Assembly (NCBI RefSeq): GCF_963853765.1
Contig: NC_088860.1
Coordinates: 20,770,001 to 20,834,000 of the forward strand
Direction: 5' to 3'
DNA: 64,000 nt
DNA from: Magallana gigas
Taxonomy: Eukaryota
Made by a program: the position numbers and the translations under genes. The notes beneath the pieces are model-generated. The model did not search any database and was not told where the DNA came from. It saw only the letters and a list, made by a program, of their open reading frames with translations. Positions 2,664-64,000 of the stretch are shown one piece after another (positions within the stretch are counted from its first letter, which is position 1; each line of letters begins with the position of its first letter).

Positions 2664-2812
2664 AGCATTAAATCATTATTTTTTGGAAGATATAGTCTCA
2701 TTACTGCAGTGGTGTGTGCATACAAATTTTCAAAACGCGCGTTATTCAATTTGTACGCACACACCGCTGCAGCTATGAGACTATATATTTTAAATAATAA
2801 TGATTCAATGCT
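2664..2812. repeat. ~150-bp palindromic (foldback) element; related partial copy at ~12360-12485
   Basis: Arms AAGCATTAAATCATTATTTT..ATATAGTCTCATTACTGCAGTGGTGTGTGCATACAAATT and AATTTGTACGCACACACCGCTGCAGCTATGAGACTATAT..AATAATGATTCAATGCTT flank an AACGCGCGTT-containing loop. Confidence 0.8.
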
Positions 2813-4511: not shown

Positions 4512-4591
4512 AGCCTTTAAGCCAGATCTGATGATGAACTAGTTGACCATCCATTCTTAAACATATATTACACTTTACTCGGGAATCTTAA

Positions 4592-5076
4592 AGGGTCATG
4601 GTCACGATTTTGGTCAACACTAATTTTTCCGATTTAAATTTTTACCATGCTTCAGTAAGGCATTCTTAATAGGCAACCGAAATTTGAGTGCTATTCGTTG
4701 AGTTATTAGCATGTTACAAAGCTTGAAATTCTTTGCTATGTAAACAGAGCGTTTGTTTACATTTTGAATTTTGAAGTGAAAATTCTAATTCTAAACCTAA
4801 AATAAATGTGTTAAACAGAAGGTACTGTTTATTTATGCTTAAAATGAATAAAAAGATGGAAAAATCAGGTTGAAAAAGATTTTTTACTGGTATATTGAAC
4901 CAATGTAAACAAAAACAGGGCACGAGCCTTGTTTACATGACAAAGAATTGTGAGCCCTGTATCTTGCTTATAACTCTTTGACTGACTTTCAAATTTCATT
5001 TTATCATTAGAAATGCATTTCTAAAGCATTGTAGATAATAAAAATAGAATTTGACCAAAATCGTGACCAAGACCCT
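4592..5076. mobile_element. MITE of the same family in opposite orientation, TTAA target duplication
   Basis: TTAA|AGGGTCATGGTCACGATTTTGGTCA ... TGACCAAAATCGTGACCAAGACCCT|TTAA. RR..YY termini with TTAA TSD fit Kolobok. Confidence 0.88.
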
Positions 5077-5450
5077 TTAAAGGTGTGTACATATATTTCA
5101 ATCTTAAATTTTTTTTCTATCGAATCATGTGCAGAGTTGTTAGCTTCTTCCTCTTTTTATACCAATGACAATGCTTAGAAGTACGATTAATAATGACTAT
5201 AATATATCATTTATAATGAATGAGGAATTTCAATGATTTTACATATACATCTATATTACATTGTAAATGTCGTTATGACAAAAAGAAAAACTACTCAAAA
5301 GTTAATACTTCGGCCAGCACTAACAACATTAGAGATAACTTCCTTGTTGTGTTTTGTTCTCTGATTTTCTTTTTATTGTTCTTACATAAATGGGCCGAAT
5401 AAGGTCAAGGTCATCAGCTGTAGACAAGTCCTAACAAGAGAGAGATAATG

Positions 5451-6355
5451 TATGGAACGCCATAGCTGCCTTATGTGGCTATTTCATGTGAAGATGGTGC
5501 TTTATTATATTATGCTGTGGTTATTTCATGTGAAGATGGTGCTTTATTTTATGAAGATGGTGGTTTTTTTATGTGAAAATGGTGCTTTATTATATGTACA
5601 TGGTGCTTTTTATGTGAAGATGGTGCTTTATTATATGTAGATGGTGCTTTTTTATATGAAGATGATGCTTTATTATATGAAGAAGGTGCTTTTTTATGTA
5701 AAGATGATGCTTTATTATATGAAGGTGGTGGTTTATTATATGAAGATGGTGCTTTATTATACGAAGATGGTGCTTTTTTATGTGATGGTGCTTGTTTATG
5801 TGATCTAACAAAATTAAGAGCGGGTCAAAGATCTGATTTTAATCCGATTGCTAGGACATTCACGCCTCATCGAATAACCTGCTCTTCGCTTAAACACAAG
5901 TAATTCAAAATTTACAACATGACATAATTAATAATTTCAATTTTCTGCCCTTTAAAGTTCAGGATAACGTTACTAGGCTTTAATTCTTGTAATGTTCTGA
6001 ATCCGTCATTATATAGTTATCACTTAATAGATGTAAGTTCGGTTTTCTCGTTAGCTTATATACTAATTGTGCTAGAAAAATGAGAAACTAGCAATGGTGC
6101 ATCAAATGGATTTTGATTGCATGAATGTTTTGTTAACCTTCAAAATTTTGAGATAAAAAAGGGTAAACTCAGTATTAAAAAAATAAGAAGTTCCGAGTGA
6201 CCACCTTCACATTAAAAGGCACCATCACATAAAAAAGCACCATCTTCATATAATTAAGAATCATCTTCAGATAAAAAAGCACCATCTTCATATACATGTA
6301 ATAAAGCACCATCTTCACATGAAATAGCCACATAAGGCAGCAATGGCGCTTCATA
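5451..6355. mobile_element. Foldback-type element with minisatellite-built inverted arms and a 6-bp TSD (ATAATG)
   Basis: Left end TATGGAACGCCATAGCTGCCTTATGTGGCTATTTCATGTGAAGATGGTGC matches the reverse complement of the right end. ATAATG lies at 5445-5450 and 6356-6361. A ~21-bp unit (ATGAAGATGGTGCTTTATTAT) repeats at ~5480-5800 and inverted at ~6215-6325. Confidence 0.85.
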
Positions 6356-31582: not shown

Positions 31583-34500
31583 TGTATCTCACAACGTGTG
31601 ATTACATGTAGAATCAGTATTTACTATCATTTCATTATTCTTCCGTAGACTTCCTTTGTTCCAAGGCGCTGCTTCAGAATTTTTGATTCCTTTGCTTGCA
31701 ATGCAGGTTTTAGATAAATCAAAGTGTGATTTTCCAGCAAAAATTTATATAGGTATGAATATACTTTTAATCACCAAAAAAACATTTTCTGGAAGTGTAC
31801 ACTCGTGTTGTCGTTTTTTTGTTGGGGTTTTTTTTTTGGGGGGGGGGGGGGGTTGTTTGGTTTTTATTTGTTGTGGTATTTTTTTTTTGTTTTGTTTTCT
31901 TTTTTCAAAATTGTATTTTGACAGAGCAGTTTTATCTCGGAGTAAGTATTTTAGACAAATATTTATTACAAGTAAATTTTATCTCCTTTTATTCGGTGTA
32001 TCATTTTAGACACAAACTCTACGATAACAAACACGTCTGGTATACATCTTGATCAACATAGCGAGTTTATACTGAAGAATATTCGAGAGGTGAGCATCTT
32101 TCATTTGTTTATGTACATATATCAAGATTTAAGCAGATAAACGTTACAAACTGTAAAAATAATTAAATTTAAATGAATGTTTTGCTTGATGGGTGTCTAC
32201 TATTTACCTAGAAAAGAATTCTTATTTCATATTTCGAACATAGAAGAATTTCCCCTATTTAAGAAAAAATTGATGAATACATTAAAATGACAATACTGTT
32301 TTGTAGTAATATGGAGTATTTAGTGTTTCACGTCTATTTCACGTTCACGGAAGCTCCAAGGAAGTTTGGTGGCAGCAGGGACTATCCAATTTTTGATTGG
32401 AGCAACAGGATTAGTCAGCCTCCTTCTGAAATTCATCGGACCAATCACAATCGTTCCAACACTTCTTCTGATTACCGTTTTTCTCGTCAGAGCATGTGTT
32501 AAATTTGCTTCCGTTAATTGGGGCATAGCGTTAATGTGAGTTGAAACAATTAAATAATTTTATTTAATTTCATACAATCAGATGGCTATTTTGGAAGTCA
32601 CTGACTACTTTTATGTTGTTGAAGGGTAGCAGCAGTATCACTGATACTGTCGCTCTATCTAAGCCATCACAACACCCCAATTCCAATGTGGACGAGAAAG
32701 AGAGGTTTTCATATCCTGTGGTTTCCATTACACCAAGTATATTCGGTAGGTTTTCATAGATATACGGCCAATTGCATGCATGATTCATTCTAATATTTTT
32801 AGAAAAAGGTTTCTATCTAGCAAATTTAAATTTATTGTATTGTCGAGCCTTAGCCAGAAAATGATTAACAGTAACAGCAATTCATACTTCAAATCAGCAT
32901 GTCATCTCGTACTTAGTATTGCGATGCAATGTCGAAATCATACTTACATGTATATGTAAGGGTATTCAAGTCGCGTCGAACACAGGATAAACCAGTATTC
33001 AAAAATAAAGTTAAAACCTTTCTTTCAAAAATGAAATCAGATTTAAGAAATGAGATTTTAGCTGCAAGGTACATGTAAATAATCAAAATATTAAAACCAA
33101 ACATCACATTGTGTATTTCACGTAAAGCAATGTTCCTATACCTATTCCTGGGTTTTTAGATCCTTATTGGGATTCTAGTTGGTTGGTTTGTGTGTGGTGT
33201 AATGACAGTGGCAGGTACGTTTAGTCCTGATGACAAGTTGGCGAGAACAGACACTGGCTTGGACGCCATTAGAAAAGCTGATTGGTTCCGGCTACCATAC
33301 CCAGGTATTTCTGCTAATCAACTACTCAATTATTTGACAACATGCCCTGATCACATTTAATGAGAAATAATGACATTGTATACATTGAATTTGATTTTCA
33401 ACTGCTAAATTGAATTTTACGAACTTTTCAGGTCAGTTCGGTTCCATTTCGTTCAGTGCGAGCATTTTTATGGGATTTTTTATAGGAACTATTATGTCTA
33501 TTCTCGATTCTATTGGGGACTACTACGCATGCGCCAAAATATGCAATCTTCCTCCTCCACCAGCACATTGTGTAAATCGAGGGATAGCCATTGAGGGATT
33601 TTGTAGCCTTATCGCGGGCTTCCTTGGTTGTGGACATGCTACGACAACGTATGGAGGAAACATTGGTGCAATTGGCGTGACAAAGGTTAAAAATCATTGC
33701 ATCGTATATTAATATATTTGGTCAACGATGTTTCATTCTTAACCAGCCCATGTTATGTCCTCGCAATAAATGATTTGCTTTCGTCATTACATTAATTATT
33801 TTACAATAAGACTTTGTTATAAAAGTGTATTTTGTCGATAATTATTCATTGACAACATTAAAATTATCTTGTCTTTGCATAATTGCTTTTCCATCTTCTT
33901 TCTAAAATTATCCTGTTTTCATAATTTGCTTTTTCATCTTCTACGTAGGTAGCCAGTAGAGATGTGTTTATCGCTACTGGTGTGATATATTTCATATTCG
34001 GTATCATTGGGAAGATTTCAGCCGTTTTCCTTACCATTCCTTATCCAGTCTTAGGCGGAGCGCTCATTGTGATGTTTGGAATGTTCAACGGTGTCGTTCT
34101 ATCGAACTTGCAAGTTGTCTCCCTTAGCTCAACCAGAAATCTTGCCATTATGGGAACAGCTATCTTGTTTGGTTTCATGATTCCGTATTGGTTGGAGACA
34201 AATCCTGATGCTATTCAAACAGGTGTCATGTTTTCAAAGTATTAAAATCAAATGAGAGAAGACAACAGCAATAGAAACACATTTTCTAAGTACTGACTGG
34301 GTTTGGTTTTATTGATTATTATTAATTTTGAAACCAACGATATGTAAATTCGCATGGCAAGTAGTTTCTTAGCTGTGTTTGAGAAAATACGCACATTGTT
34401 TATCAAAAATTTATCTAATACGACTTGTCAGGCAAATCCAAGCTATAGACGGAAAACCCTATATTAATCATGTTATGTAATATTCAATACGCAAGTATTT

Positions 34501-36032
34501 TTTCTATCTTTAGATTAAATTGTCTGCTCTTAATTGGTTCCAAACGCTACCACTGTAGAAATGGCGCTTTTGTAATTAATGACAGTGAAACCAGTCCTAT
34601 TGAGCTCTTGTGTAGGAATATACGACTACAAAATATATAAATTGTTCCTACTTTTCAAAATATAACTATTTTCAAGGTATTTATAAATAAGGTTCTCTGA
34701 AAAAAAAATCCTCTGATTACTTAACATCGAATTCATCGAGTATTTTCATGAAAAAAAGACATGATAATAATTATTTGATACGTATATATGTTTAGGATCA
34801 GTAACCAGTGATGGCGTGATCAAAATGCTGCTTGTTAACCCCAACCTGTGCGCGGGTGTTGTTGCCTGCTTTCTGGACAATACAGTCAAAGGTTGCTTTT
34901 TTTAATCTCTCATATTTCATAGATATTGCATTTATTGAATGATAGCTGTTTACGAGGGTATTTTTATTTTTTTAATTTTCTATTCTATATCTAAATGAGA
35001 ATATATTTGATCTTAAAGGGGCATGGTCAAATTCTATTTTTCTTTTTTTATTAATTACAATGCATTTCTAATGATAAAATGAAATGTCAGAGTTAATCGC
35101 AGAGTTATAAGCAAGATACAGGGCTCTCAATTCTTTTCATGTAAACAAGGCTCGTGCCCAGTTTTTGATTACATTGGTTCAATATACCAGTAAAAAATCT
35201 TTTTCAACCTGATTTGTCTATCTTTATATTAATTTTAAGCATAATTAAACAGTTGCTTATGTTTAACACATTTATTTTAGGTCTGAAATTAGAATTTTCA
35301 CTTCAAAATTCAAAATGTAAACAGACGGTTTGTTTACATAGCAAAGAATTTCAAGCTGTGTAATTTGCTTATAACTCAACGAAAAACACTCAAATTTTGG
35401 TTGCCTATTAAGAATGCCTTACTGAAGCATGGTAAAAATTAAAATAGGAAAAATTATTTTTGACCAAAATCGTGACCATGCCTCGTTAAGATAACAAAAC
35501 AAAGTGACATTAGATATAAACAATGTATGTTTATATGTATGCATGTCAAAACTTCATAATGATAAATGAAATAAAGCTGGATTCATTAAAATTCAAAACG
35601 CAAACAAAACTATATCTTAGGATTTAGAATACTTTTATTTTTTTAAAGTTTGTTATTTATAAAGGCATCTATAACACGCACCAAAACTCTTTTTATGTTT
35701 TTAAAAACGATTGTAATGCATTTTGTATGGCTAATAATTATGTTTCTCTTGAAACGGTAAGAGAAATTACTTAATTTGACCGATTTTTTTTTATTGAACA
35801 TTACCTCTATCTGAATGCATGGCAATTCCATGATTATTTGTATATTTGTTTAAATGCAGGTACTTTGAAAGAAAGAGGAATTGAGGCATGGCAGATAATG
35901 ATCGACGACAAAGCAGACAATATGAAAGAATTTGATGGTGACGTCACGATCTATGACATCCCTCTCCCACGATATCTAAAAAAATCCAAAGTCTTCCGGC
36001 GTTTACCATTTATTCCTCCTGTTCGTGAATAA
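30269..36032 (+). CDS. SLC23A: SLC23/NAT transporter copy B, intact, 598 aa
   Basis: Exons 30269-30478, 31364-31521, 31649-31752, 32010-32089, 32354-32535, 32625-32745, 33160-33304, 33432-33685, 33949-34222, 34796-34891, 35860-36032 sum to 1797 nt, in frame, all GT-AG. Motifs: TM1 FQH, RLPLFQG, DSIGDYYACA, NRGIAIEG, xNIGAIGVTKVASR, LGG..FGM, RNL..G, LDNTV. Confidence 0.93.
31527..31585. repeat. (CT)n(GT)n compound microsatellite in intron 2 of copy B
   Basis: Directly visible. Confidence 0.95.
35017..35485. mobile_element. Kolobok-like MITE in the last intron of copy B
   Basis: TTAA flanks and TIRs (left TIR partly deleted); paralogous to 27856-28284. Confidence 0.85.
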
Positions 36033-44300: not shown

Positions 44301-46415
44301 TTTGTGGCGGAAGGTTTTCAAGAAGGAAATGAAAAGGTTTCATAAATCAATAGTTTTACTATTACTTTAGCTTCCTAATTTTCAGCGCAGACCAAACTTC
44401 TAGCTAGTTTGTGTATTATGATTTATTAATGTGATCATGAAAACATATTAAAACAATATTTTGATATTTCTATCGATATATTTTGGCATATTTAACTTAT
44501 ATTTCATAGAAGTTAAAAAAAAATTAACTCCAATTGTGTCCCAAAATTAGCTTATTTCATGCTATATCTCAATTTTTTTTAGATGTGACCCCTACTTGGT
44601 TTCTTTCAAATGAGACATTTAATGTATGTCTATTTGTATGCAAAGTTTTGGAAAGATGACATTACATTACATTTATTTTTTTTATTTGATTACTCCAAAA
44701 TTTTGTAACATCTGCTGTTGTGTTCACTATGTACTGGCCTATGAAGCCACCATTTAAGCAAGAATTTTTAAACTTTGACTGTAATTTTCTTTTATTGTCA
44801 CTACATGTGTTCAACTTCATTCTGTTTAAAATTCGTAACTAAATAATGTTCAAACTATAAATATTTGATTTATTTCTTTAAATTTTCAGGCTCAATTTCA
44901 AATTTTAGTTAAAAAATTTCAGGAAAACTATCTTTTCTGGTTGGGGCCCTATATTTCCAATAAATGGCATGTGATATGGGTCACAAATAAAATAAATGAA
45001 CATTTTAGGCCTCCATCTTTATATCCAAGTGGTTTTCGAATGATTGACACTTGACATTACTATTAAATGCTTTTTCATCTTCTTCGTAGGTAGCCAGTAG
45101 AGATGTGTTTATAACTACTGGTGTCATATATTTCATATTCGGTATCATTGGCAAGATCTCAGCCGTCTTCCTTACCATTCCTTATCCAGTATTAGGCGGA
45201 GCGCTCATTGTGATGTTTGGAATGTTCAACGGTGTCGTTCTGTCAAACCTACAAGTTGTTTCCCTTAGCTCAACCAGAAATCTCGCAATCATTGGAACCG
45301 CCATCTTGTTTGGTCTCATGATTCCATATTGGTTGGAGACCAATCCTGATGTTATTCAAACAGGTTTCTTTCCTTTTGAGAATAAACAAACAAATGCCAG
45401 TTCGACTAAATATGACTAAAATAGGATACAAAAGTACCCTTGAAAATGTATTTAATTTAGTTATCAAATCTCGTCTTGTTTTGGAGGCCTCCCAACTGCA
45501 ACAGGTTTGGCAAGAATAGAGGCACTGTTATACTACTAATATATTCGTGAAATACACAATTTATTCTTGAGATTCACATTCAATTTGACAATAATTTTAT
45601 GGAACCATTTTTTGTTAGGTTCAGCCGCAAGTGATGGCGTAATAAAAATGCTACTTGTTAATCCCAACCTGTGCGGAGGAGTTGTTGCCTGCTTTTTGGA
45701 CAATACAGTGAGAGGTAGACAAGTTTTTTTTTCATTTTTCTCTGTATTTCATATTTCAGACTTTGACAAATTTGCATCTATTGTTAAGCAGATGTTTGTG
45801 GATATGATGTTTAATTTTAAACATTTTTTTTCTTATTTTAATAGCGATTTTTTTAATCAATGCACTAAAGTTTACTAAATTGATACATGCACATCATTTT
45901 CGTTCGGGTTGTTCAATGTGAAATGATTCCATGAGATTCAATACTGAGACTTGTATCAGCGCTAAAACGTTATAACGGTATTTTGAATGAATATTGGCTG
46001 CAACATTCGTTTGAATTCAACTTTGAAAAAAGGCAAACAATGCTTTAAACTACCATAAGCATATTAATACATTGAAATTCATTCGTTATTAATTAGCAAT
46101 AAAACATGAAAACTTCATTTACGGTTTATAAAACACTGCTAAAATTGTTACTTTTTATGGTAATACAGTGTGTATTGTTTTGTTATGAATATAACATTTT
46201 AAGAATATTTATATTTTTTGTCATACAATGCCTCAAATTCAGGTACCTTAAAAGAAAGAGGAATCGAGGCATGGCAGAAAATGATCGACGACAAAGTAGA
46301 CGATATGGAAGAATTTGACGGTGACGTCACTATCTATGACATCCCTCTCCCACAATTTCTCAAAAGATCCAAACTATTCCGGCGTTTACCATTTATTCCT
46401 CCTGTACGTGATTGA
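37653..46415 (+). CDS. SLC23A: SLC23/NAT transporter copy C, apparently intact (end of exon 2 in gap)
   Basis: Exons 37653-37862, 40514-(gap at 40669), 40862-40965, 41174-41253, 41500-41681, 41797-41917, 42166-42310, 42450-42703, 45090-45363, 45619-45714, 46243-46415. Exon sizes equal those of copy B and no stops were seen. Confidence 0.9.
38249..38808 (-). mobile_element. HINE/pearl-like element with (CT)n microsatellite in intron 1 of copy C
   Basis: One end has hairpin AGCCAGGACTCTGC-TTTCA-GCAGAGCCTGGCT; the other has AGTACTGAAGTACT stem-loop plus subTIR AGCCGGGCTC. It sits in an A-run and is absent at the same site in copy B (~30850). Confidence 0.8.
39889..40383. mobile_element. MITE with AGGGACTTGGACACGA TIRs and TTAA TSD (Kolobok-like, second family)
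   Basis: TTAA|AGGGACTTGGACACGA ... TCGTGTCCAGGTCCCT|TTAA. Related right ends lie just upstream of exon 2 in A (~23780) and B (31252). Confidence 0.85.
40669..40835. other. Assembly gap covering the end of exon 2 and intron 2 of copy C
   Basis: Directly visible. Confidence 1.
42749..43791. mobile_element. 1,043-bp non-autonomous element with CAG TSD (PIF/Harbinger-like) in intron 8 of copy C
   Basis: CAG|GGGCTCGTAACATAAAG ... CTTTATGTTACGAGCCC|CAG: perfect 17-bp TIRs. CTTAAG/CTTAG motifs cluster near both ends and there is no long ORF. Confidence 0.88.
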
Positions 46416-53800: not shown

Positions 53801-56800
53801 TGTACCGATGATCTCACCATGCACCATATCATTAACTTCTTCTATGGATATTTTTTCTATGGGATTTGTTTAGGTCAGTTTGGTCCTATTTCGTTCAGCA
53901 CGAGCGTATTTGTGGGATTTTTGATAGGAACTGTTACCTCTATACTTGATTCTATTGGGGACTACTATGCATGCGCAAAGATGTGCAATCTTCCTCCCCC
54001 ACCAGCACATAGTGTTAATCGAGGGATAGCCATTGAGGGGTTCTGTAGTCTGATCGCGGGTTTCTTTGGATGTGGACATGCTACGACAACGTACGGAGGG
54101 AATGTAGGTGCAATTGGCGTAACAAAGGTAAAAATACAGTTTTATTAGAAAGTGAAATGAAGTCTGAGATTGAATTAATTTAAAGTTCTTTTCAGCCACT
54201 CTTTTCGTACAAGTCACTTTGTGCTTAAGGCTAACAGGAGTAAATACATTGACCCGCAAAAAGACTGTTATATACAATCTTTATAAACATGCATTTATTT
54301 AATAAACTTTTTATAGAACTTTCATTGAGTGTATTAACGAAAGATTTGTTAAAATGTGTATCCAATTACAATTTTAAAAATTGGTATTATTTCGTTTTCA
54401 ACATATCATTTTAATATGATGAACGTTCTGACAAATTTAACTTTTCATGTACATGTACCAGATAATGCTTATGTGTATATTAAAAGCGTATAAAAGAATA
54501 AACAAAAATCGCTATAAGTTTTTTTTTTTTAATATTTATTAACAAACTGTTAATAAAAACGAAATTTCCTACAGAAACAATCATCAAAATCAAAACTTTT
54601 TTTATAGTAAAAAATGAAAAAAAAAATCTGTATGATCTTTCCATGCAGGTATCCAGTAGAGACGTTTTTATAACAACGGGTGTGATATATTTTATATTCG
54701 GTATCATTGGGAAGATCTCGGCAGTTTTCCTTACCATTCCTTATCCCGTACTCGGTGGGGTACTTTTCGTGATGTATGGAATGTTCATCGGTGTTGTTCT
54801 GTCAAATCTACAAGTTGTTTCCCTTAGCTCATCTAGAAACCTTGCCATCATGGGAACCGCCATCTTGTTTGGTCTCATGATTCCGTATTGGCTGGAGACC
54901 AATCCCGATGCTATTCAAACAGGTTTTATTTATTGATAGTAATTAGACAACAACAATAAAAAATAACAAGACTGAAAATGGACCTTTATAAAAATTTATC
55001 ATACTTTTATTAAACTTATGATTAGTAATTGATTTCTTAATTATACTCCCTAGCCGTAGTGCATTTTGAGAAAAGTAGTAGGTTTATTTAAAAAATCGCA
55101 TTGTTAGGTTATCGCATGTTTAAAATAAGACTATGTCTGTGCTTGGTTCTTGTCTGGTTCTGGCCCCGGGGCCATAAAAGTAAGACGATCACACTTTTGT
55201 TATGTCTCACTCTTTCACTATATATTCCTTTTCTAAAAGTGAAACTGAGATCAAAACAGAGCTCGTCTAACTTATATGGCCATGGGGCCAGGAGACCTTG
55301 GACTTTGTGTCAATCTTGAGAGTTTGGCTACAATATGTATGTTTCGAAAATACGTAATGAATTTCTGTGATGCATGTTAATAATGATCATTGAGCATTCA
55401 ATTAATTGTAGGGTCAGCAACCACTGATGGTATGATCAAATTGCTATTGATCAATCCCAACTTGTGTGGGGGAGTTTCGGCCTGCTTTCTGGACAACACA
55501 GTTAGAGGTATGGTTATTTTTGCTACTTCGTTATCTCTATAAGGGTCATTTTCAAAATTTGTCCAAATTTATGTTATTCAAGAATTCTAGTAAATATTGT
55601 GATAAAATCACAAATTTTGTTAATCTAATGAATTAAACTACAATCTGAAGACGAGATAAATGATAAAGAATGATTAAAAATTGATTTAATAACTGAAAAA
55701 AAGAAATTAAACATGTGTTGGTGAGAGAAAATTGGTTGTGATTTCGCCAATACTATACATTCAACTGCTATTATTACTGCATTTAATTTAATATAGCTGT
55801 ATAAAAATACATTTGATGTTTAGTTTGTGTTTAAAACTGTCTAAAATTGTGATAGGTTGTATTTTTAAAAAATGGTAAAATATGATATTTTAAATGATAA
55901 TGTTTGTTATTTTCGCCGTGTCCTTGGAGTAACCAAGGCATATAAGTTGAGTGTAATAGTTATCTTTCCTTGTGGAACTCTTCAACACCAGCTTTCTTCT
56001 TAAGTTCCTGTTCCCGCCAAAGCACAAACAGGCACCAAAAACATGTGTGTCTCAACGCTAACAAAATATGTGGTTTGAGGTAAGTTTGATTGCATTAGTA
56101 ATTTATTTTGAAGTCAGAGTTACCATGCTACTGTGACAATTATTTATTATATCGTTTCTTTGATGTATTAAGCAAATTTGTAGCAAAATACATATCATCT
56201 GTGAACTTTGTTCTATCTCAACAAGTCAGCCATTTTATGTATGCTTCCCACTATTTATAGAATAATTCCCTGGTGTTACTGTCCATTGTGTTACTGCAGG
56301 AAAAGTTACTCAAAGGACACATTTGATTATTCCATGGACATATATAGAAAAATGTATTAAACAGAATACAATTATGAGTCATCTGTTTTTTTATTCCGTA
56401 TATTTTTTAATTGACTGATAACTGTGAATGTAAAAAATGCAAAATTAATTGAAAAAAGCTGTTCGCGATCTGCTATTACTATGTTTTCGATGTTTTGGTA
56501 ACACCAGGGACATACATGTAATTAGTAACTCCAATGACAAATTAAAACAAACTTCAAATTTATCAATTCGAAATAAAACCCATTATGTCAAGTTTATTGC
56601 AAACTAATAATGCGGAATAATGTGCATTGTTGAGTGTTGCTTATTTTCAATTTTTATGTTTATGAATTTTACAAATTGATTAAATAAACAATATAAGTAA
56701 CACAAAGGACAAGTTTAGTAACTCTTATGACATTAACACGATGAAACATTTAGATTTTAGAGTATACTCATCTTTTTTTTATATTGCTGTAAAACATAAA

Positions 56801-59800
56801 GTCTATTTATTTGAGGTAGTTGAAATATATAGCTTATTCATTAAAATAGCTTTAATGAATGGATATTTAGTTGATACTTATCTATGGTAACACCATGGAC
56901 AAATGAAGTTACTCAAGAGACACACAAACAATTAAAAGGTAGAAAATGAAAGACAATAGCACAAATGCAGGTGTAGTGTTCAGTGTATGGTATGTTCGGT
57001 TTAAATGATAGGATGGTACAACTGAAGTCAAAACAAACTCATAACTTGCTTAAAAAATGTACATGTAAGTAGTTTGAAAATAGTAACTCAAAGGAAGCTA
57101 ACAGAATATGAATTAATACAGTATTTTATGTATTTTAGAATCAATATGGCGTTAACAAACGCAGAAAAACAGCGGCGCTATAGGGAAAGGCGAGATATGG
57201 ATCCGTCTAGAAGGGAAGAACATTTGAAAAAGCGAAATGAAAAATATAAAAATGATGTACAAGTTGGAAGACTTAAAAAGATATCAGATATGACCCCAAG
57301 GGAACAACGAAAGCAAAGAAAAGAATGGCGTAAAATTAAGCAAAACCAAAGAAGAAAGAAAAAGAAGCAAGAAGTAAAGGCACTGACCCCTCCATCATCA
57401 CCAGTGGACATTTCACAAAGAGAGCACCATAGTACTACGAGAAAGAAAAGAGCAATTGCAAAGTGCTATCGAGATAATGCAAAGCTGAGAGAGGAGTTAC
57501 AAAAGCAGAAACGTACAATTACAAAGTTAAGAATGAAAGCAACACGGCAAGAACTAAAAAGAAAGGGGGGTACTGATACACCAAGAACTAAAACCAAAAA
57601 ACTTCTCAGAAATTGGTCAACTGAAAAAGGAGGAGGAACAAGAGCTAAACGCAGAAGAATGAAAAATTCAGTTAAAAGATCCCTGATTTTTCAATTTACC
57701 CTCAATGAAGAAATGAAAGCAAAATACAGACAGCTCTGTAAAGGAAAAAAGAAGAGCATACTAGAGATAATGAGAGGGAAACTTATGAGGAAATACAAAG
57801 TACTTGGAAGAGCTTCTAAAGAATTTTGTGTCTCAGGGGGAAGGAACCGCAAAGTGAAAGGGTCACTTTCCTCAAGACTAAGGAAACAAGTACAAACATT
57901 TTATGAGAGAGATGATATTAGCAGATTAACCTCTGGAATAAGAGACACAATTACAAGACAAGGAGAAAAAAGGCAAAAGAGAATACTGAATGACACAATT
58001 GAGAAGATCCATGAGAAATTCCTCTTGGAAAATACAGAACAAAAAATAAGTTACACATCATTTTCCAGATTAAGACCATTTTGGGTGCAGCCACCTAGTG
58101 AGGCAAACAGAGACACATGTGCTTGCAAACAGCACGAAAATATGCAGTATCTTGTTGATGCTCTATTTAACATCAAGCTTTTACATTCTAAACGGCTACA
58201 TGATGTTGCAAAGAATTTCACTTGCGATATGACTGACTTGAATTGCATGTACGGTAGATGTTCAAAGTGCAACGAGGTGCGTCTTGCAATGGAGGTCTCT
58301 GGACAGAAGGTTGATCGAAATGAAGAGACAACATTTTTTCAGTGGAAGACTAAAAAAGAAAGCAGATTGATAAAAGGTGAAGCAAAGGAAATAACAGTTA
58401 CAGTTAGAGAAAAGATCACAGACAAATTGGAATCATTGATAGACAAATTCTGTCAAGAAATGCCGAGATTCAAAATCCATATTTACAACATTACCAATCA
58501 ACTAAATCATTACAGAGCCCTTAAAGAAAATCTGAAGAAGACAGAAGCTCTGATACACATAGATTTTTCAGAAAACTTTCAGTGCAAGCTGTCCAAAGAA
58601 ATACAAGGCATGCATTTTGGTGCATCTCAAAGACAGATTACGTTGCATACTGGTGTGTACTACACAGAAACAGAATTTCAAACCTTTTGTGCTGTATCAG
58701 ATTCTTTGCAACATGATCCCAGTGGAATTTGGGCATTTCTTGACCCTTTGCTGAACAAACTTTTAGACCAGCATCCAGATGTAGAAACCATACATTTCTT
58801 TAGTGATGGGCCATGTACTCAGTATAGACAAAAAGGGAATTTTTTCTTATTATCACAGGAGATGTCTGATCGAGGAATACAGGCTACTTGGAATTTCCAT
58901 GAGAGTGGACATGGAAAGGGCGTTCCAGATGGGGTGGGAGGTGCCCTTAAAAGAGCAGCTAACAACCTTGTCTTGCATGGAAAGGACATTACAAATGCTG
59001 CGTCGTTTGTTCAAAGCATCAAGGAGAAAGAATCTGCCATATATATATATATGAAGTTCCCACAAGTGATGTTACTGAGAAGTCAGAAATATTAGCTTCC
59101 CAAAATTTGAAAACAGTTCCTGGAACATTCAAGCTGCATCAGATAAAGACTTCAAGAATGGGAGAAATTTATTTTAGAAACATCAGTTGTGTTTGTGATG
59201 AGGGTTGTTTGCACACTGGCCACGATTGGAAATTTGCAAGAGTAGCTGACACTGATAAAGACTTAAAAACTCAGACAAACAAGAAAAGAAAAAAAAGAAA
59301 TGTAGATAGTAATCAGGACTGTGACAGCACAGAACAAGTATTGGTGGAAGAAATTTCTACATCACAGTCCGGCAACTCTACATCATGTTCTCCAGATGTT
59401 GGAAGCACAACACATTTAAAAAGACCAAGAAAGGCAAAAATGAATGATTTAGGAGTGAAAGATCATAAAACTCCACAGATCTGCAAAGGAATACCAGATA
59501 GGGAACAGTTTTTTACAAATGCTTTGAATGCCCTTGGAAAGTGTAAATCCTTTGAGGAAATAGTCACAAATTGTTCATCATTGTCAAGCTTAATGCCAAA
59601 AGATGATATCACAATACCAATGCATCAGTCATCAATCATGAGTACAGGTTTGCAGGTGGATGAGGATGCACTTCAGATATGTCCAACTGATATTCCCCAG
59701 GATTGTATTCTATATCCAGTAAAAGTAGGAGCGGACGGTAATTGTTTACCGTACACTGGCAGTATCATAGCATTCGGAAATGAGGATAGGGCAGCTGAAA

Positions 59801-62699
59801 TCAGGGTGAAGATTATAGTAGAAGCCGTTCTCCATATGGATCTTTATCTTTCCCATGAATATCTCGGAAGGGGCATAGAATCAACAAATAAAGATTTGGC
59901 AAAGACATGTGCTTTTTATTCTGATGAATATGCAGCGGATATTACGCTAACACAAGATCAAATAGCTGAAATTTACAAAAAGGAAATCTTAAAAATTACC
60001 CAAGACAAATCTTACATGGGAATATGGCAGATATTTGCTTTATCCAGTGTGTTGAACAGACCGATCTTCTCAGTATATCCAAACTTAGGAAATCCAAACG
60101 TTCGAAAAGACCTTCATCGTGTGATTATACCAAGACAGACAACAAGCCAATCCATGACTTATGTCATGTGGACAACAACAAGAACAGACATGGTAACAAA
60201 TCACTGGATTCCAAACCACTTTGTCGCATTACTTCCTATAGACATTGAAAATGATGCAGGAGAAACTCATAATCTGGAAACCACAGTATTGAATGCAACT
60301 AATGAGAAAATTGGAACAGCTGGACAGACCACTGATACACTGGAAGAGATAAAGTATGAAGATGCAGAAGATGTTAAGACTCTGGAGGAAACGTTGTTGA
60401 AAGCAACTACAGAACAGAAGAATACAGAACTGATCAGAGATACACCAGAAGAGAGACAGGAGATAAATACAATTAGAGAACATAAGAATACAGATGATAG
60501 TCATATCGCAGATACACCAAAAGAGATACAAAATAAAGATACTGAAAAGAATATAGAAGCGATTAAGACACTGGAAGCCATAGACTTGATTGCCTCTGAA
60601 GAGCAGAAAAAAACAGATGGAGAGAACCCAAATTCACGTGAAGCGAGACCGGCAGAAAAGGCCGATGAGATTGAGACACTTGGTAAGACAATGTTGAATG
60701 CAACTACAGAACAGAAGATTACAAAAATGCAGATACCAGATCCAGCAGAAGAGAGACAAGATAAAGATGGTGAAGGGATGGAGGCACAACAAAAGAACCC
60801 AGATGAACAGAGGATGGATACCACGGAAAAGATATCGGATATCACCACATGTACAGAAGACAAGATTCCACACAATCTTCTTAACCGTTACGTACTAGTA
60901 CAATATGATAACGAACCCTACCCTGGAGTTGTTATTGATTGCGATGATGATGAAGTATTTGTTAGATGCATGCACAGGGTTGGGCGGGACCTTAAATCAT
61001 GTTCTTTTTACTGGCCAAAAGCTGTGAAAGATGAATGTTGGTACAGTATTGAAGATGTTTTGGCAATAATTCCACAACCACATGCTGTAGGCAGAAAGTT
61101 TTATGTAGATGCTACATTGTGGAAAAATGCTATTAACAAAACAAAACAAAACAACTGAAATCAAAATTCCGAACATGAAAAAGGATTGGGAACTCTTCAT
61201 GTTTATACATAAATATGAACAAATATATGAACCAATCTAAGTATTTTCATGTATGTTTCATATTAAAAACAGGGTTTATATTTTTAGATGTTCTTTGTGT
61301 TATCTTTTGTCTTTAGTGTTACGATATCTGATTTGTTGCATAAATGCATGTTAATTAACCAATATTTTAAGGTTATGTGGTTGTATCATTTATGATATGG
61401 GCATAGCGACTTGATTTCAGTTTTATTGTTGTCATAAATTCTGTTACCTGGACAAATAGTCTGTGTTGTTACTGTTATATCCTTGGTGTTACCTTGTCAG
61501 ATTCCAATATGTATAATAAAGGCTAATTTTCTGTCATTTCTCCCCAAAACCAAATACTCTTATTTTTATCTTTAAAAACAATGCCATTGTAATGATAAGT
61601 GGAGGTAAGAGGAATAATTTTCTTATTTATTTCAGAGAATTGTATAAACTATCCTTTGTGTTACTTTTTATGTCCTTTGTGTTATGTAGATTTCCCTTGT
61701 GTTACTTACACATTTCCTCTAAATTTTTATTTCAAATCTCTCAACAATTTCACTTAACTTGCAATAATATACTGCCGTTTTCTAATGAAAATGTTTGTTG
61801 GCAAAATTGGTATTTATTGGCTGAGAAAACTAATTTTTTTTACAGGTACATATTAAAGGATTATCAAATGTTACCACACTAGGCATTTATAGCCCAATGG
61901 TTTAAAATATTTCTGAAATGGTCCAATTTTTTTGTATATTAGCAGAATAATTTTTATCAAGATGTTAAGAATTTCATGCTACAAACCTGAAATTTTTGTT
62001 AAATAAAATTTTATTGTGACTTCTAACCCGGTAACACCATGGACATTAATTGTCGACTCAATGTGCATAAAAAGTTTTTTTTAGTATTTGTTAATGTAAT
62101 TCTTTGTGTTTAAGTATTGTTAATGCAACTCTGATGTTTCCTTTATAAAATAAAACTTTCAAAAAGTTAGAACTTGGCATTTATTTTCTTAGAATGTTGC
62201 TGGTGGAAATTGGACCAATTTTGAAAATGGCTCATAAGCAAAATTAGATGTAGTTTTTTTAAAATTATAATTTTCTTCTATTATCATAATCCCGCATGTA
62301 CCTTAAACCATAGTTTCTAAATACATTGAACCTCATTTTAGTAGCATTTGGTATTATGATAAATCATTTTTAAATCAAATGAAATGAACGGTTATTTCAG
62401 TTTTTATTACTGTTCCGCAAATGAAAGTAAAATCCATGTATTGTTCGATGTTTACACCTCTTCTCTTTTATCTATATTTGGTTATTGGACATGTTACAAT
62501 GTTTTGAATATATTTGTCTGTTTTAGGTACTTTGAAAGAAAGAGGAATTGAGGCATGGCAGAAAATGATCGACGAAAAAGCATATGATATGGAAGAATTC
62601 GATGGTGACGTCACGATTTATGATATCCCTCTCCCGCGATTTTTGAAAGAGTCCAAATTGTTCCGGCGTTTACCATTCATTCCTCCATTGCGTGATTAG
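47837..62699 (+). CDS. SLC23A: SLC23/NAT transporter copy D, intact, 599 aa; last intron expanded by a transposon
   Basis: Exons 47837-48046, 48217-48374, 48469-48572, 51027-51109, 51350-51531, 51641-51761, 53343-53487, 53874-54127, 54649-54922, 55412-55507, 62527-62699 sum to 1800 nt, in frame. Confidence 0.92.
48958..49805 (+). mobile_element. Pearl/CvA-like non-autonomous element with tandem core unit and (GACT/GACG)n microsatellite
   Basis: Core unit CTAGGGCCTGAAAACCCTGACTCGGGGAAT..TTTCACAATTTAGGTAG; GGACTGACTGACTGACGGATGGACGGACGG near 49720-49758; terminal CACAAC-TT-GTTGTG stem. Contains an N gap at 49388-49543. Confidence 0.65.
50519..50960 (+). repeat. 2-3 tandem ~180-bp units of the same core repeat
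   Basis: TATTGGCC..CTAGGGCCTGAACCCCT..TTCACAATTTAGGT recurs at about 50530, 50715 and, degenerate, 50875. Confidence 0.75.
52303..52968 (+). mobile_element. HINE/Helentron-like element, third copy of the 10877 family, in intron 6 of copy D
   Basis: Same subTIRs, central palindrome (~52564-52675) and 3' stem-loop. Confidence 0.78.
55919..57097. repeat. Left subterminal array of ~15-bp GT(A/T)AC(A/T)C(C/A)A(A/T)GGACA motifs
   Basis: Copies in both orientations at about 55919, 56267, 56281, 56305, 56498, 56524, 56697, 56718, 56886, 56908 and 57082. Confidence 0.8.
57146..61158 (+). CDS. Sola2-type DDD transposase fused to a vertnin-like OTU domain and a C-terminal beta-barrel-like domain; one frameshift at 59039-59052
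   Basis: ATG at 57146 follows an acceptor TATTTTAG (57138). Motifs: CACKQH..C..CMYGRCSKC; HIDFSENF, FFSDGPCTQY, GHGKGVPDGVGG (three Asp). Deleting one AT from (AT)7 joins ORF1 to ORF2 (..SAIYIYEVPTSDV..LKTVPGTFKLHQI), giving 1,336 aa. OTU motifs: ADGNCLP, YMGIWQIFALSSVLNRPIFSVYP, VMWT, NHFVALL. Confidence 0.85.
61290..62045. repeat. Right subterminal array of the same motif
   Basis: Copies at about 61290, 61479, 61651, 61671, 61692 (reverse) and 62030 (forward GGTAACACCATGGACA, identical to 56886). Confidence 0.8.
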
Positions 62700-64000
62700 G
62701 TGCTCTATCAAACATAACGGATGGCCTTAACTAGTCATTCACGTTACATGTAACTAAGCATAGTAACTGTAATTAAACAAAATAACTTTAACTACGTGTA
62801 TTTCCTTGTTTACACTGATCATTTGTAATAATAAGCAATTTTAAAATTCTATTAACATGTTGTTACTTCGTTTGTGATTTCATGATTCATTTGTGTTGTT
62901 AAAAGAGTATGTCATTTTCAAAGTACTATTGACTGAAAATTCAAATTATAGTATAAAAAAAGAAGCACCATTGTTTCATACGATTGTTTGTTGTTCATTT
63001 CTGAATAAATTCTTCTCTGTTTATGATTATCAAAATGTTTTTCAATTTTTCCATCTTGTGTTTACTGTTTTTTGTGCCAGATGTCATCAATGTAATTTTA
63101 ATCTTTTTAGCATCTTTCTAAATTCCTCACTAAAAATTGAATTCCTTGCATTTGGATCGCCATTACTTTCATGCAGTTTTCCACGTGATCTATAAAAACT
63201 TGTCGGTTTAAATTTTTCACCTTCCAAAATTTATGATAGTGATGTTTTAATACTTTTTTCTGTCTTCGTTCTAGTCTATATTTATTTGACTTGCATCCTC
63301 GTACTTTTGAAAGCTTGAGTAGATTTAATTGTCTTACATTTATTTTCTTCATTATTTTTTTCCCCATCTTAAATACAGATAGTTAGGTGATCCCTTTTGC
63401 TCTGACCCTCTACAAAATGTAGCTTTCTTATTCTAACATAAGTTGTCTAATTTTCCTCTTCAAGTTGTTTCGAATTTGTCTGAAACTTGTCATTTGTGTG
63501 TTTCACTCTATGTACAGTGTAGCCTTCGTATTAACTTTCTAATTTTTTAAATCTTTTTCACTATTTCGTGTGATCATCCACTAGGCGATTTCGGAAGTTG
63601 TTTTTAGAGTGTGATTTTCTTTGCATAGTGTTCCTTATACTCTTGTTTAAAATCGGTTAATGGTTATTTTTTTATATAATATATACAGCATGATTTTTTT
63701 CTATATGTTTGAATAGGCAACGTTTTTCAAGAAATGTCACAAAAATATTTTAAATTTTAAAACAAATCTACAATATTCATAGCGTAGCAATTTCAACCTA
63801 CAATGAAGAAGAATAATAAGCATTTAATAAATAAGTATCAACTTTAAAAGTAATTATCATAATAATGAAAAAAATGATTGGTATACAAAGACAAAACATC
63901 AAAATACAATATCAAAGTTTCAACATGTGATGCAAAGTCTAGCATTTGTAATGAATAGATATAAGATCATCGTATATGGCCAAAGCATATGATCAAAAAT

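What the first reader, a model, noticed from the sequence alone, without database searches (positions are those of the whole stretch)
55543..62233. Complete Sola2-type transposon encoding a transposase-OTU protease fusion
Seen: exact boundaries (ATAA TSD, 21/24 TIRs with GRG..CYC ends) and one long reading frame, apart from a 2-nt slip, running from a basic N-terminus through a Cys/His cluster and DDD core into an OTU-type domain. Established: Sola2 elements have GRG termini and 4-bp TSDs, and some other DNA-transposon groups (Ginger, Dada, Zisupton) carry OTU or Ulp1 proteases. Inference: a cut-and-paste element whose transposase carries its own deubiquitinase or self-processing protease, possibly to resist host ubiquitin-mediated turnover. 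I do not recall this fusion as a standard Sola2 feature, but could not check.
Basis: partly seen in the sequence, partly recalled or inferred. Interest (0 to 1): 0.85.

Follow-up and report, generated by a model that had tools for sequence, protein, structure and literature searches.

The report
Young Sola2 transposon with OTU protease
This is a real, recently mobile cut-and-paste DNA transposon of the Sola2 group in an oyster-like genome. Its transposase carries a ubiquitin-protease (OTU) domain and a small chromatin-reader-like domain, an arrangement that is common in molluscs but that I did not find described for Sola2.

Summary
Window 55543-62233 is a 6,691-bp element with 24-nt inverted ends (21/24 matching, GGG/GAG termini) and an ATAA duplication.

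- **Copies and mobility.** The genome holds two more copies 99% alike, flanked by GTTT and ATAT. A public oyster DNA run holds the exact empty site, so the insertion is polymorphic and young.
- **Coding state.** The window copy is coding-dead because of an extra AT in an (AT)n run at 59039-59040. Both sister copies carry one uninterrupted ORF of 1,382-1,383 codons (1,336 aa from the conserved Met).
- **Sola2 assignment.** The core has an invariant DDD triad. It shares its motifs, with the same spacing, with the published Sola2-1_HM core and not with Sola1 or Sola3. I could not run a formal tree against Repbase.
- **OTU domain.** It is a confident OTU fold, and its Cys and His are each kept in 43 of 44 relatives. 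Its nearest reviewed match is vertebrate vertnin.
- **C-terminal domain.** A Tudor/chromo-barrel-like domain follows the OTU domain.
- **How common.** The fusion defines an old, diversified clade in bivalves and gastropods, and most relatives lack it. OTU domains are already known in Ginger1 and Helitron elements.

Verdict: a new variant of a known kind, of moderate interest. What the protease does remains inferred.

The parts
55539..55542 (.). Left target-site duplication, ATAA
   Evidence: The empty-site contig in run X3 carries a single ATAA.
55543..55566 (+). 5' terminal inverted repeat, GGGTCATTTTCAAAATTTGTCCAA
   Evidence: The same bases form the end of both sister copies.
56280..56901 (.). 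5' cluster of six copies of the 15-bp motif GTAACNCNNNNGACA. These are candidate transposase-binding or regulatory sites upstream of the ORF.
   Evidence: 8 matches in the 64-kb window, all inside the element, against 0.07 expected by chance. Their function is inferred.
57023..57025 (+). TGA stop specific to the window copy, at codon 7 of the longest frame and upstream of the conserved start
   Evidence: The sister copies read TTA here.
57146..59038 (+). First part of the transposase ORF, from the conserved Met48 to the slip. It holds the basic N-terminus, the Cys cluster (58118-58270) and the DDD core (D520 at 58562, D601 at 58805, D642 at 58928).
   Evidence: Sola2 motifs.
59039..59040 (+). 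Extra AT in the (AT)n run. This frameshift disables the window copy.
   Evidence: absent from L002 and L003; absent from all four laid runs.
59041..61158 (+). Second part of the ORF, in the shifted frame. It holds the end of the core, a linker with a KKRKKR stretch, the OTU domain, acidic repeats, the C-terminal domain and the stop codon.
59644..60291 (+). OTU-type cysteine protease domain. Asp910 is at 59734, Cys913 at 59743 and His1071 at 60217.
   Evidence: Model pLDDT 92. The best PDB matches listed are all OTU domains. Vertnin is the top Swiss-Prot match. Residue conservation.
60874..61155 (+). C-terminal small beta-barrel domain plus helix, Tudor/chromo-barrel-like
   Evidence: Model pLDDT 95. 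VIA Z 5-7.2 to MRG15/MRG701 chromo-barrel, Tudor, PWWP and BAH domains. It is also present in OTU-less relatives.
61308..62045 (.). 3' subterminal region with two more copies of the 15-bp motif
62210..62233 (-). 3' terminal inverted repeat; its reverse complement reads GAGCCATTTTCAAAATTGGTCCAA
62234..62237 (.). Right target-site duplication, ATAA

Best explanation
**What it is (shown).** This is a low-copy, very young cut-and-paste DNA transposon of the Sola2 group. Its single-exon gene encodes a multidomain protein of about 1,336 aa, in this order:
- a basic N-terminal region;
- a Cys cluster;
- an RNase-H-like DDD catalytic core;
- an OTU-type cysteine isopeptidase with an intact Asp/Cys/His set;
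- an acidic repeat linker;
- a Tudor/chromo-barrel-like C-terminal domain.

Also shown: the boundaries, the 4-bp duplications, the insertion polymorphism, the intact fused ORF in the sister copies, the fold and conserved catalytic residues of the OTU domain, and the age and spread of the fusion in molluscs. The window copy is a dead member: an AT-repeat slip breaks its frame.

**How it most likely works (inferred).** The transposase binds the 24-nt ends, and probably also the repeated 15-bp subterminal motif. It excises the element and reinserts it with a 4-bp staggered cut. The OTU domain is an active deubiquitinase carried in cis, and the C-terminal reader-like domain brings it to chromatin. 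There it removes ubiquitin either from the transposase itself or from chromatin and repair factors at the donor and target sites, which would favour completion of transposition.
For: **Mobility.**
- Three copies differ by 0.34-0.76% and are flanked by ATAA, GTTT and ATAT.
- An empty-site contig, and a contig with a different left flank, occur in other individuals.
- Internally deleted and ORF-less relatives exist.

**Sola2 assignment.**
- D520, D601 and D642 are invariant in 53 sequences.
- The motifs DF[AS]EN[YF], EIQxxH, F[ST]DGxxxQY[KR] and WNF..SxHG are shared with Sola2-1_HM.
- Spacing is almost the same: 80 against 83 residues between D1 and D2, and the conserved Trp falls 28 residues after D2 in both.
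- The Sola1 and Sola3 cores differ at these blocks.
- A relative with a 39%-identical transposase has a GGGTCATT terminus and a TGTT duplication.

**Fusion.**
- The sister copies have one ORF.
- RNA-library contigs cover 56789-60538 without a splice joint and carry the intact frame. PolyA reads lie in the sense orientation.
- The OTU domain sits between the core and a C-terminal domain that OTU-less relatives also have.
- OTU-bearing proteins form a clade with 99% support.
- At least 10 diverged loci in this genome keep the transposase and the OTU domain in the same order.

**Active protease.**
- The model has pLDDT 92, and its best PDB matches are Cezanne, A20, TRABID, VCPIP1 and OTUD1 (E about 1e-7, probability 1.0).
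- Cys is kept in 43 of 44 sequences, His in 43 of 44 and Asp in 38 of 44.
- The predicted complex with this genome's own ubiquitin scored 0.49 against a best control of 0.01. The tool rates this as weak support.

**Reader-like C-terminus:**

**Precedent.** Ginger1 transposases and Helitron proteins carry OTU domains (PMC2836005).
Against: - Pfam's OTU model scores below its cut-off: 15.8 and 14.8 bits against 23.3.
- The nearest reviewed relative, vertnin, is reported to be catalytically inactive (PMC10318531).
- The ubiquitin complex score is only weak support, and it may reflect memory of solved OTU-ubiquitin complexes.
- The C-terminal fold matches are middling, Z 7.2 or less, which the tool says is common for unrelated models.
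- No reference Sola2 full-length sequence, HMM or tree was available, so the Sola2 assignment rests on motifs read by eye plus the duplication and end features.
- No experiment shows that any Sola element transposes. No data bear on the protease's substrate.
- RNA coverage is low, and contigs from RNA libraries can contain DNA.
Confidence: 0.75

Rival explanations
1. The OTU domain is a catalytically silent scaffold, as vertnin is reported to be. It would serve only as a protein or ubiquitin-binding module of the transposase.
For: Vertnin is the closest reviewed structural match: E 1e-14 to 1e-15, TM 0.70-0.75. It is listed as an inactive OTU homologue. The Pfam OTU score is below its cut-off.
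Against: The catalytic Cys and His are each kept in 43 of 44 transposon-borne sequences, down to 28% identity. This includes copies fused to other transposase types. Such conservation is not expected of a dead enzyme.
Confidence: 0.1
2. The OTU domain is a self-processing protease that cuts the long protein into a transposase and a separate C-terminal product, as viral OTU and papain-like proteases cut polyproteins.
For: It is a long multidomain ORF with flexible linkers on both sides of the protease. Viral OTU proteases appear among the structural matches.
Against: There is no conserved Gly-Gly site. Only 1 of 23 OTU-bearing relatives has any GG in the N-terminal region, and the element's own core-OTU linker has none. 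The best structural matches are cellular deubiquitinases. The ubiquitin docking test gave a weak pass.
Confidence: 0.08
3. The element belongs to a separate superfamily that merely resembles Sola2, or to Sola1 or Sola3.
For: No formal tree or HMM comparison with reference Sola sequences could be run. No Pfam family matches the core. The nearest named Atlas clusters carry DUF7869, not a Sola label.
Against: The ungapped motif blocks and catalytic spacing match Sola2-1_HM and the sea-urchin E.12 protein. They clearly differ from Sola1-1_AP and Sola3-1_HM. The DDD triad and the non-TTAA 4-bp duplications fit Sola.
Confidence: 0.05
4. The OTU half is a recent independent insertion, or a captured host exon, inside an ordinary Sola2 element. 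On this view the long frame is accidental.
For: OTU-less relatives with the same ends exist. The same OTU type also occurs on pogo-type (PF03184) and MULE (PF10551) transposases, so the module has moved between element types at some point.
Against: The same core-OTU-C-terminal order occurs in proteins that are only 30-45% identical, from Mytilus, Pecten, Pinctada, Haliotis, Patella and others. It also occurs in at least 10 diverged loci of this genome. There are no internal repeats or duplications around the OTU part. The acquisition is therefore ancient, not recent.
Confidence: 0.02

Closest known systems
Sola2 DNA transposons (reference Sola2-1_HM of Hydra; group E.12 in Majorek et al. 2014, PMC3985635)
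   Same: - A DDD catalytic core.
- The same conserved blocks and spacing.
- 4-bp target duplications and short terminal inverted repeats starting with G-purine-G.
   Different: This protein carries about 650 extra residues after the transposase: an OTU protease, acidic repeats and a Tudor-like domain. Most relatives found here (134 of the 150 best representatives) have no OTU domain. No held paper mentions a protease in Sola2.
Ginger1 transposases with a C-terminal OTU or Ulp1 domain, and Helitron proteins with OTU (Bao, Kapitonov, Jurka 2010, PMC2836005)
   Same: A DNA-transposon protein fused to an OTU-type cysteine protease placed C-terminal to the catalytic domain. The published suggestion is the same, that the ubiquitin pathway takes part in transposition.
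   Different: The catalytic domain is unrelated: a Gypsy-integrase-like DDE in Ginger1 and a Rep/helicase in Helitrons. Their OTU domains match Pfam PF02338, whereas this one is of the divergent vertnin type and falls below the Pfam cut-off.
Vertnin (VRTN) of vertebrates
   Same: It is the best reviewed structural match of the OTU domain: residues 56-250 of vertnin, 23-25% identity, TM 0.70-0.75, E down to 9e-15. UniRef names many mollusc copies 'Vertnin'.
   Different: Vertnin is reported to lack the catalytic site. It carries Vertnin_mid and HTH_Tnp_1 domains, which this protein lacks. It has no Sola2 core. The C-terminal domain of this protein did not match vertnin.
Cellular OTU deubiquitinases of the A20 / Cezanne (OTUD7B) / TRABID / VCPIP1 type
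   Same: The same fold over about 210-230 aligned columns, with a probability of 1.0. The catalytic Cys sits in a DGNC motif and the His lies near the C-terminus of the domain.
   Different: Identity is only 13-18%, and there are no zinc-finger A20, ankyrin or UBA accessory domains. Activity and linkage preference are unknown.

Membership tests
Sola2 group of the Sola superfamily | DDD catalytic triad in an RNase-H-like core | tested here: met
   D520, D601 and D642 are invariant in an alignment of 53 homologues. Their window positions were verified. The RNase-H-like fold itself was not modelled here; it rests on Majorek et al..
Sola2 group of the Sola superfamily | Sequence likeness of the core to reference Sola2 rather than Sola1 or Sola3 | tested here: met
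   I compared it by eye with the cores printed in the supplement of PMC3985635. It is identical at 10 of 24 positions in the first-Asp block and at 15 of 45 ungapped positions from the second Asp to the WNF..HG block of Sola2-1_HM. The Sola1-1_AP and Sola3-1_HM blocks differ. I computed no E-value, because the reference has no session id and I did not type it in.
Sola2 group of the Sola superfamily | 4-bp target-site duplication | tested here: met
   ATAA, GTTT and ATAT at three insertions. A single ATAA in the empty allele. TGTT at a 39%-identical relative.
Sola2 group of the Sola superfamily | Termini 5'-GRG ... CYC-3' | tested here: inconclusive
The element has GGG and GAG termini, and a related family has GGG...CCC. 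Bao et al. 2009 is not held.
Sola2 group of the Sola superfamily | Placement inside the Sola2 clade in a tree with reference Sola1, Sola2 and Sola3 transposases | not testable with these tools
   No Repbase or Dfam sequences and no Pfam model are available. My tree holds only homologues found here.
OTU cysteine proteases (Pfam PF02338, MEROPS C85-like) | OTU fold | tested here: met
   AlphaFold model with pLDDT 92.3. 55 PDB matches at E 0.001 or lower, and those listed are all OTU domains.
OTU cysteine proteases (Pfam PF02338, MEROPS C85-like) | Catalytic Cys and His, with Asp three residues before the Cys, present and conserved | tested here: met
   The DGNC and NHF motifs. Cys in 43 of 44 sequences, His in 43 of 44, Asp in 38 of 44.
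OTU cysteine proteases (Pfam PF02338, MEROPS C85-like) | Score above Pfam's gathering threshold | tested here: not met
   15.8 and 14.8 bits against 23.3. None of 53 relatives passes at E 0.001 or lower. It is a divergent branch, the vertnin type.
OTU cysteine proteases (Pfam PF02338, MEROPS C85-like) | Deubiquitinase activity or ubiquitin binding | tested here: inconclusive
   The predicted complex with this genome's own ubiquitin scored 0.49, with a best control of 0.01. That mark was reached by 51 of 78 solved complexes and 2 of 108 mismatched pairs, but at 0.60 or under by only 5 of the 78 solved and by all 4 mismatches that passed. The runs agree in at least 74% of contacts, and the partner's pLDDT is at least 82. 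The tool's verdict is weak support. Enzymatic activity cannot be tested here.
Vertnin family | Vertnin_mid and HTH_Tnp_1 domains following an inactive OTU-like domain | tested here: not met
   There is no Pfam hit to those domains, and the catalytic residues are present here. Only the OTU domain resembles vertnin. The protein is vertnin-like in one domain and is not a vertnin.

The most novel reading that the evidence does not exclude
The transposon-borne, catalytically intact vertnin-type OTU module is an active, chromatin-directed deubiquitinase that the transposon needs in order to move. Here it sits on a Sola2 transposase; elsewhere it sits on pogo-type and MULE transposases. On this reading, the mobile module is also the source from which vertebrates domesticated the now inactive OTU domain of vertnin (VRTN), a regulator of vertebral number.
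Probability: 0.15. Interest if true: 0.75.

Novelty: new variant of a known kind. Interest (0 to 1): 0.5.

Why it matters
- **A test system for Sola.** To my knowledge no Sola element has been studied experimentally. This family offers naturally intact genes, exactly defined ends, a documented empty site and a polymorphic insertion. That is what a first transposition assay for the superfamily would need.
- **A recurring pattern.** Together with Ginger1, Helitron, pogo-type and MULE fusions, it shows that unrelated DNA transposons have repeatedly recruited ubiquitin or ubiquitin-like proteases. This points to a general, still untested link between the ubiquitin system and transposition or its control by the host.
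- **A possible origin for vertnin.** The likeness of the domain to vertnin gives a testable idea about where that vertebrate developmental gene came from.
- **Annotation.** Proteins auto-named 'Vertnin' in mollusc genomes are transposases, not vertnin orthologues.

Tried and rejected
- **Pfam.** Scans of both ORF halves, the intact sister protein and 53 homologues gave no family for the core and only a sub-threshold OTU hit.
- **Solved structures.** A sequence search of solved structures with the second half found nothing.
- **Papers.** Bao et al. 2009 and Yuan & Wessler 2011 are not held. Supplements of two other papers held no Sola2 sequences. One broad literature search was uninformative.
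- **Self-processing at a Gly-Gly site.** The element has RKGG and KGGG in its N-terminal region, but only 1 of 23 OTU-bearing relatives has any GG there, and the core-OTU linker has none. I rejected this as unsupported.
- **C-terminal domain.** Foldseek against PDB and Swiss-Prot gave only weak, mixed rows: RimP, MazF, BAH, PWWP, all at E 0.01 or higher. The wider VIA search gave a consistent but only middling royal-family signal. Vertnin did not appear, so I found no second domain shared with vertnin.
- **MITE swarm.** The end sequence occurs only 11 times in the genome, six of them from the three full copies.
- **Selection between copies.** L002 and L003 differ at 7 synonymous and 18 non-synonymous codons. 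That is about neutral, as expected after insertion, so it says nothing about function.
- **Rfam.** No RNA family was found in 54000-64000.
- **Ubiquitin docking.** Weak support only.
- **OTU gains and losses.** My tree cannot settle whether the OTU domain was gained once or twice. A second deep OTU-bearing clade came in through the OTU-based search, so sampling is uneven.
Full report
**1. What is in the sequence**

- The stretch 55543-62233 begins GGGTCATTTTCAAAATTTGTCCAA. It ends with the reverse complement of GAGCCATTTTCAAAATTGGTCCAA. The two match at 21 of 24 positions, and ATAA lies directly outside both ends.
- This was the longest inverted pair found in the region.
- Two long ORFs on the plus strand, 57074-59095 and 59107-61158, lie in different frames.

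**2. It is a mobile element, and a young one**

- A DNA search of the window's own assembly (564 Mb, 29 contigs) found two more full-length copies at 99% identity, L002 and L003.
- They start and end at the same bases but sit in unrelated flanks. L002 is bracketed by GTTT and L003 by ATAT.
- The three copies differ by 0.34% (window against L002) and 0.75-0.76% (either against L003).
- Contigs and reads of four public runs were laid on 55043-61042. One DNA contig of an 'oyster metagenome' run (X3) reads 55500-55543 and then continues with CAAAATTAGATG.... That is the sequence just after the right-hand ATAA. It is therefore the unoccupied site with a single ATAA.
- A contig of another run (X15) joins the left end to a different flank, which indicates a further insertion site in another animal.
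- The end sequence occurs only 11 times in the genome, six of them from the three full copies. The family is low-copy and has no swarm of miniature derivatives.
- More distant relatives (about 68-74% DNA identity) include an ORF-less element of about 5.6 kb (L059). Another (L060) lacks the region matching element positions 2052-5733, which is the internal-deletion pattern typical of cut-and-paste elements.

**3. The frame**

- The alignment of the three copies shows 78 variable columns. The only difference at the frame break is an extra AT at 59039-59040 in the window copy, (AT)7 against (AT)6.
- L002 and L003 have a single ORF of 1,383 and 1,382 codons. All four laid runs also lack the extra AT.
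- The alignment with an OTU-less relative starts near Met48 (MALTNAEK...), and the consensus of 53 homologues starts at the corresponding Met.
- The window copy has a further private change, TGA at 57023-57025. It lies upstream of that Met.
- The window copy is thus a dead member of a family that has naturally intact members.

**4. Expression**

- Contigs of an RNA-seq library (X16) cover 56789-60538 in overlapping or adjacent pieces without any splice joint. They carry the intact frame, and their variants are those of the L003-like copy.
- In a polyA RNA run, about 1% of which was read, 8 reads lay on the stretch. Their first mates lay on the minus strand, which in most stranded libraries means sense RNA.
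- This fits a low-level, unspliced transcript across the transposase and the OTU domain. No single contig spans both, and contigs from RNA libraries can include DNA.

**5. The transposase**

- No Pfam family matches it.
- An exhaustive profile-free search of 1.84 billion cluster representatives found 8,660 relatives at E 0.001 or lower, and 1,333 at 1e-30 or lower.
- In an alignment of 53 of them, D520, D601 and D642 are invariant. They lie within the blocks IHxDFSENY, HFFSDGPxTQYRQK and WNFxEAGHGKGxxDGxGG. Six cysteines upstream are at least 90% conserved.
- The supplement of Majorek et al. 2014 (PMC3985635) prints the RNase-H-like cores of Sola2-1_HM, a sea-urchin Sola2 protein, Sola1-1_AP and Sola3-1_HM.
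- Read against these, the element shares the following with Sola2-1_HM:

| Feature | This element | Sola2-1_HM |
|---|---|---|
| First-Asp block | DFSEN-F | DFAEN-Y |
| Next block | EIQGMHF | EIQSYHW |
| Next block | TLHT | SLHP |
| Next block | SDSLQHD | SDDITHD |
| Second-Asp block | FFSDGPCTQYR | LFTDGCAGQYK |
| Last block | WNFHESGHG | WNFFATSHG |
| Residues between D1 and D2 | 80 | 83 |
| Residues from D2 to the Trp of WNF | 28 | 28 |

- The Sola1 core (FDLEK..., SDNCGGQN) and the Sola3 core (KDYCQ..., SDNASSYH) differ at these blocks.
- Together with the DDD triad and the non-TTAA 4-bp duplications, this places the element in Sola2.
No tree with reference sequences could be built.

**6. 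A close OTU-less relative**

- At L058:2233-7581 lies a 5,349-bp element with 27-nt inverted repeats that begin GGGTCATT. It has a TGTT duplication and a 697-codon ORF.
- That ORF aligns with residues 46-713 of the present protein at 39% identity, E 3e-146.
- The first half of the present protein is therefore a complete ordinary transposase of this family. Everything after about residue 735 is extra.

**7. The OTU domain**

- Pfam's OTU model hits residues 946-1024 below its threshold.
- An AlphaFold model of residues 870-1100, built on 44 aligned homologues, has a mean pLDDT of 92.3.
- Its best matches in the PDB are all OTU deubiquitinases: Cezanne, A20, TRABID, VCPIP1, OTUD1, OTUD3 and viral OTUs. 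The best E-value is 1e-7, and probability is 1.0 in the rows listed.
- Among reviewed proteins the six best matches are vertebrate vertnins: residues 56-250, TM 0.70-0.75, 23-25% identity, E 9e-15 to 1e-12. Cellular OTU enzymes follow.
- The catalytic residues are kept: Cys in DGNC in 43 of 44 sequences, His in NHF in 43 of 44, and the Asp three residues before the Cys in 38 of 44.
- Vertnin, by contrast, is listed as an inactive OTU homologue without a catalytic site (PMC10318531).
- A predicted complex of the domain with ubiquitin encoded in the same genome (L061:1495-1722) scored 0.49 against a best control of 0.01. The mark was reached by 51 of 78 solved complexes and 2 of 108 mismatched pairs, but at 0.60 or under by only 5 of those 78 solved complexes and by all 4 mismatches that passed. 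The runs agree in at least 74% of their contacts, and the partner's pLDDT is at least 82. The tool calls this weak support, and it may reflect memory of solved OTU-ubiquitin complexes.

**8. The C-terminal domain**

- Residues about 1290-1383 form a conserved module. The invariant or near-invariant residues are Y16, Y21, P22, G23, C37, M38, F50, W52, P53, D58, W61 and Y62 of the domain.
- It is also found, directly after the transposase, in relatives without an OTU domain.
- Its model (pLDDT 94.8) is a small beta-barrel followed by a helix.
- Foldseek gave only weak rows.
- An exhaustive structural comparison put MRG701 and MRG15 chromo-barrels, Tudor, PWWP and BAH domains on top, at Z 5-7.2. 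The tool warns that this is a middling level.
- A chromatin-reader role is therefore a reasonable guess and no more.

**9. How old and how common the fusion is**

- Of the 150 best representatives, 16 carry the OTU domain and 23 carry the C-terminal domain.
- A search anchored on the OTU part found 82 clusters. Most of them also have the Sola2-type core. The named ones come from Mytilus, Pecten, Pinctada, Saccostrea, Mya, Sinanodonta, Ruditapes, Haliotis, Patella, Littorina and Elysia, and UniRef labels several of them 'Vertnin'.
- A few have the same OTU type on a pogo-type (PF03184) or MULE (PF10551) transposase.
- In a tree of 155 cores, the element lies in a 99%-supported clade of 30 rows. 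Of these, 26 have the OTU domain, and the other four are truncated or have only a partial OTU match. The nine proteins that certainly lack it, because the C-terminal domain follows the core directly, cluster elsewhere. A second, deep OTU-bearing clade of nine also exists.
- In this genome at least ten diverged loci, down to 23-27% identity in the core, keep the transposase followed by the OTU domain on the same strand.
- The OTU domain was thus inserted long ago between the core and the C-terminal domain, and it has been kept through much divergence. It is not a nested insertion in this copy.

**10. Other features of the element**

- About 1.6 kb of non-coding sequence precedes the conserved start at 57146, and about 1.1 kb follows the ORF.
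- The motif GTAACNCNNNNGACA occurs 8 times in the 64-kb window, against 0.07 expected. All 8 are inside the element: six at 56280-56901 and two at 61308-62045.
- These are candidate transposase-binding or promoter elements. That is an inference.

**11. Mechanism**

- Shown: the anatomy, the mobility, the fusion and the conservation of the catalytic residues.
- Inferred:
  - The DDD core cuts and rejoins DNA, producing a 4-bp duplication.
  - The OTU domain is an active isopeptidase acting on ubiquitin or a ubiquitin-like protein.
  - The C-terminal domain tethers the protein to chromatin.
  - Removing ubiquitin from the transposase or from repair and chromatin factors at the break helps transposition. 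Bao, Kapitonov and Jurka proposed this kind of role for the OTU and Ulp1 domains of Ginger1 (PMC2836005).
- The self-processing alternative found no conserved Gly-Gly site. The dead-scaffold alternative is at odds with the conserved Cys and His.

**12. Comparison and novelty**

- OTU domains on transposon proteins are known for Ginger1 and Helitrons, and Ulp1 domains for Mutator.
- No paper in the held library links Sola2 with an OTU domain or any protease.
- I could not consult Repbase or Dfam, where oyster Sola2 entries exist (PMC10294476).
- I therefore rate the finding as a new variant of a known kind: a Sola2 lineage with an OTU plus reader-like extension. It is well supported as an object, and its function is untested.
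I reached both independently from tool results.

**13. Limits**

Runs labelled as oyster hold the sequence.

Noticed in passing
window 56280-56901 and 61308-62045: The 15-bp motif GTAACNCNNNNGACA occurs 8 times, only inside the element, against 0.07 expected by chance. Looser variants such as GTTACTCAAAGGACA lie nearby. These are possible transposase-binding or promoter repeats.
   Followed up: partly
window 59644-60291; proteins P0225, P0228, P0234, P0239, P0238: The same vertnin-type OTU domain is fused in other animals to pogo-type DDE_1 (PF03184) and MULE (PF10551, with FLYWCH) transposases. In a tunicate protein it sits beside a PHD finger. The module seems to have moved between transposon superfamilies. 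Vertebrate vertnin is its closest reviewed relative.
   Followed up: partly
L058:2233-7581 (G000:C6:54382232-54387580): An OTU-less relative of 5,349 bp. It has 27-nt inverted repeats starting GGGTCATT, a TGTT duplication and a 697-codon ORF that is 39% identical to residues 46-713 of the element's protein. A near twin lies at G000:C5:15712245-15713495.
   Followed up: partly
L059 (G000:C8:21056500-21064500) and L060 (G000:C5:49203500-49208500): Non-autonomous relatives at about 68-74% DNA identity. One is about 5.6 kb, with both end regions but no ORF of 150 aa or more. The other has an internal deletion matching element positions 2052-5733. L059 lies only about 230 kb from the window on the same contig.
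   Followed up: partly
window about 55157-55295: A repeat of about 135 bp just left of the insertion has many copies across the genome (83-86% identity). Many copies match on both strands, like a palindromic miniature transposon. Other parts of the flank recur at window about 45241-45367, 34111-34241 and 34793-34903.
   Followed up: no
run X15, contig ending at window 55538: A contig joins the element's left end to a different flank (...TTGCAGGGTTTCAAATG). This suggests a further insertion site of the family in another individual.
   Followed up: no
protein P0137 (798 aa): A protein with this eukaryotic transposase core and OTU domain is deposited as part of a 'Sedimenticola sp.' metagenome-assembled genome, on a 3.4-kb contig. 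It is probably host (mollusc) DNA binned with a symbiont.
   Followed up: no
window 60292-60873 (residues about 1095-1290): The acidic Glu/Thr/Lys-rich linker has loosely repeated units, for example TLEETLLKATTEQKNTE and TLGKTMLNATTEQKITK. It has no detectable homologue in any relative, so it evolves fast.
   Followed up: no
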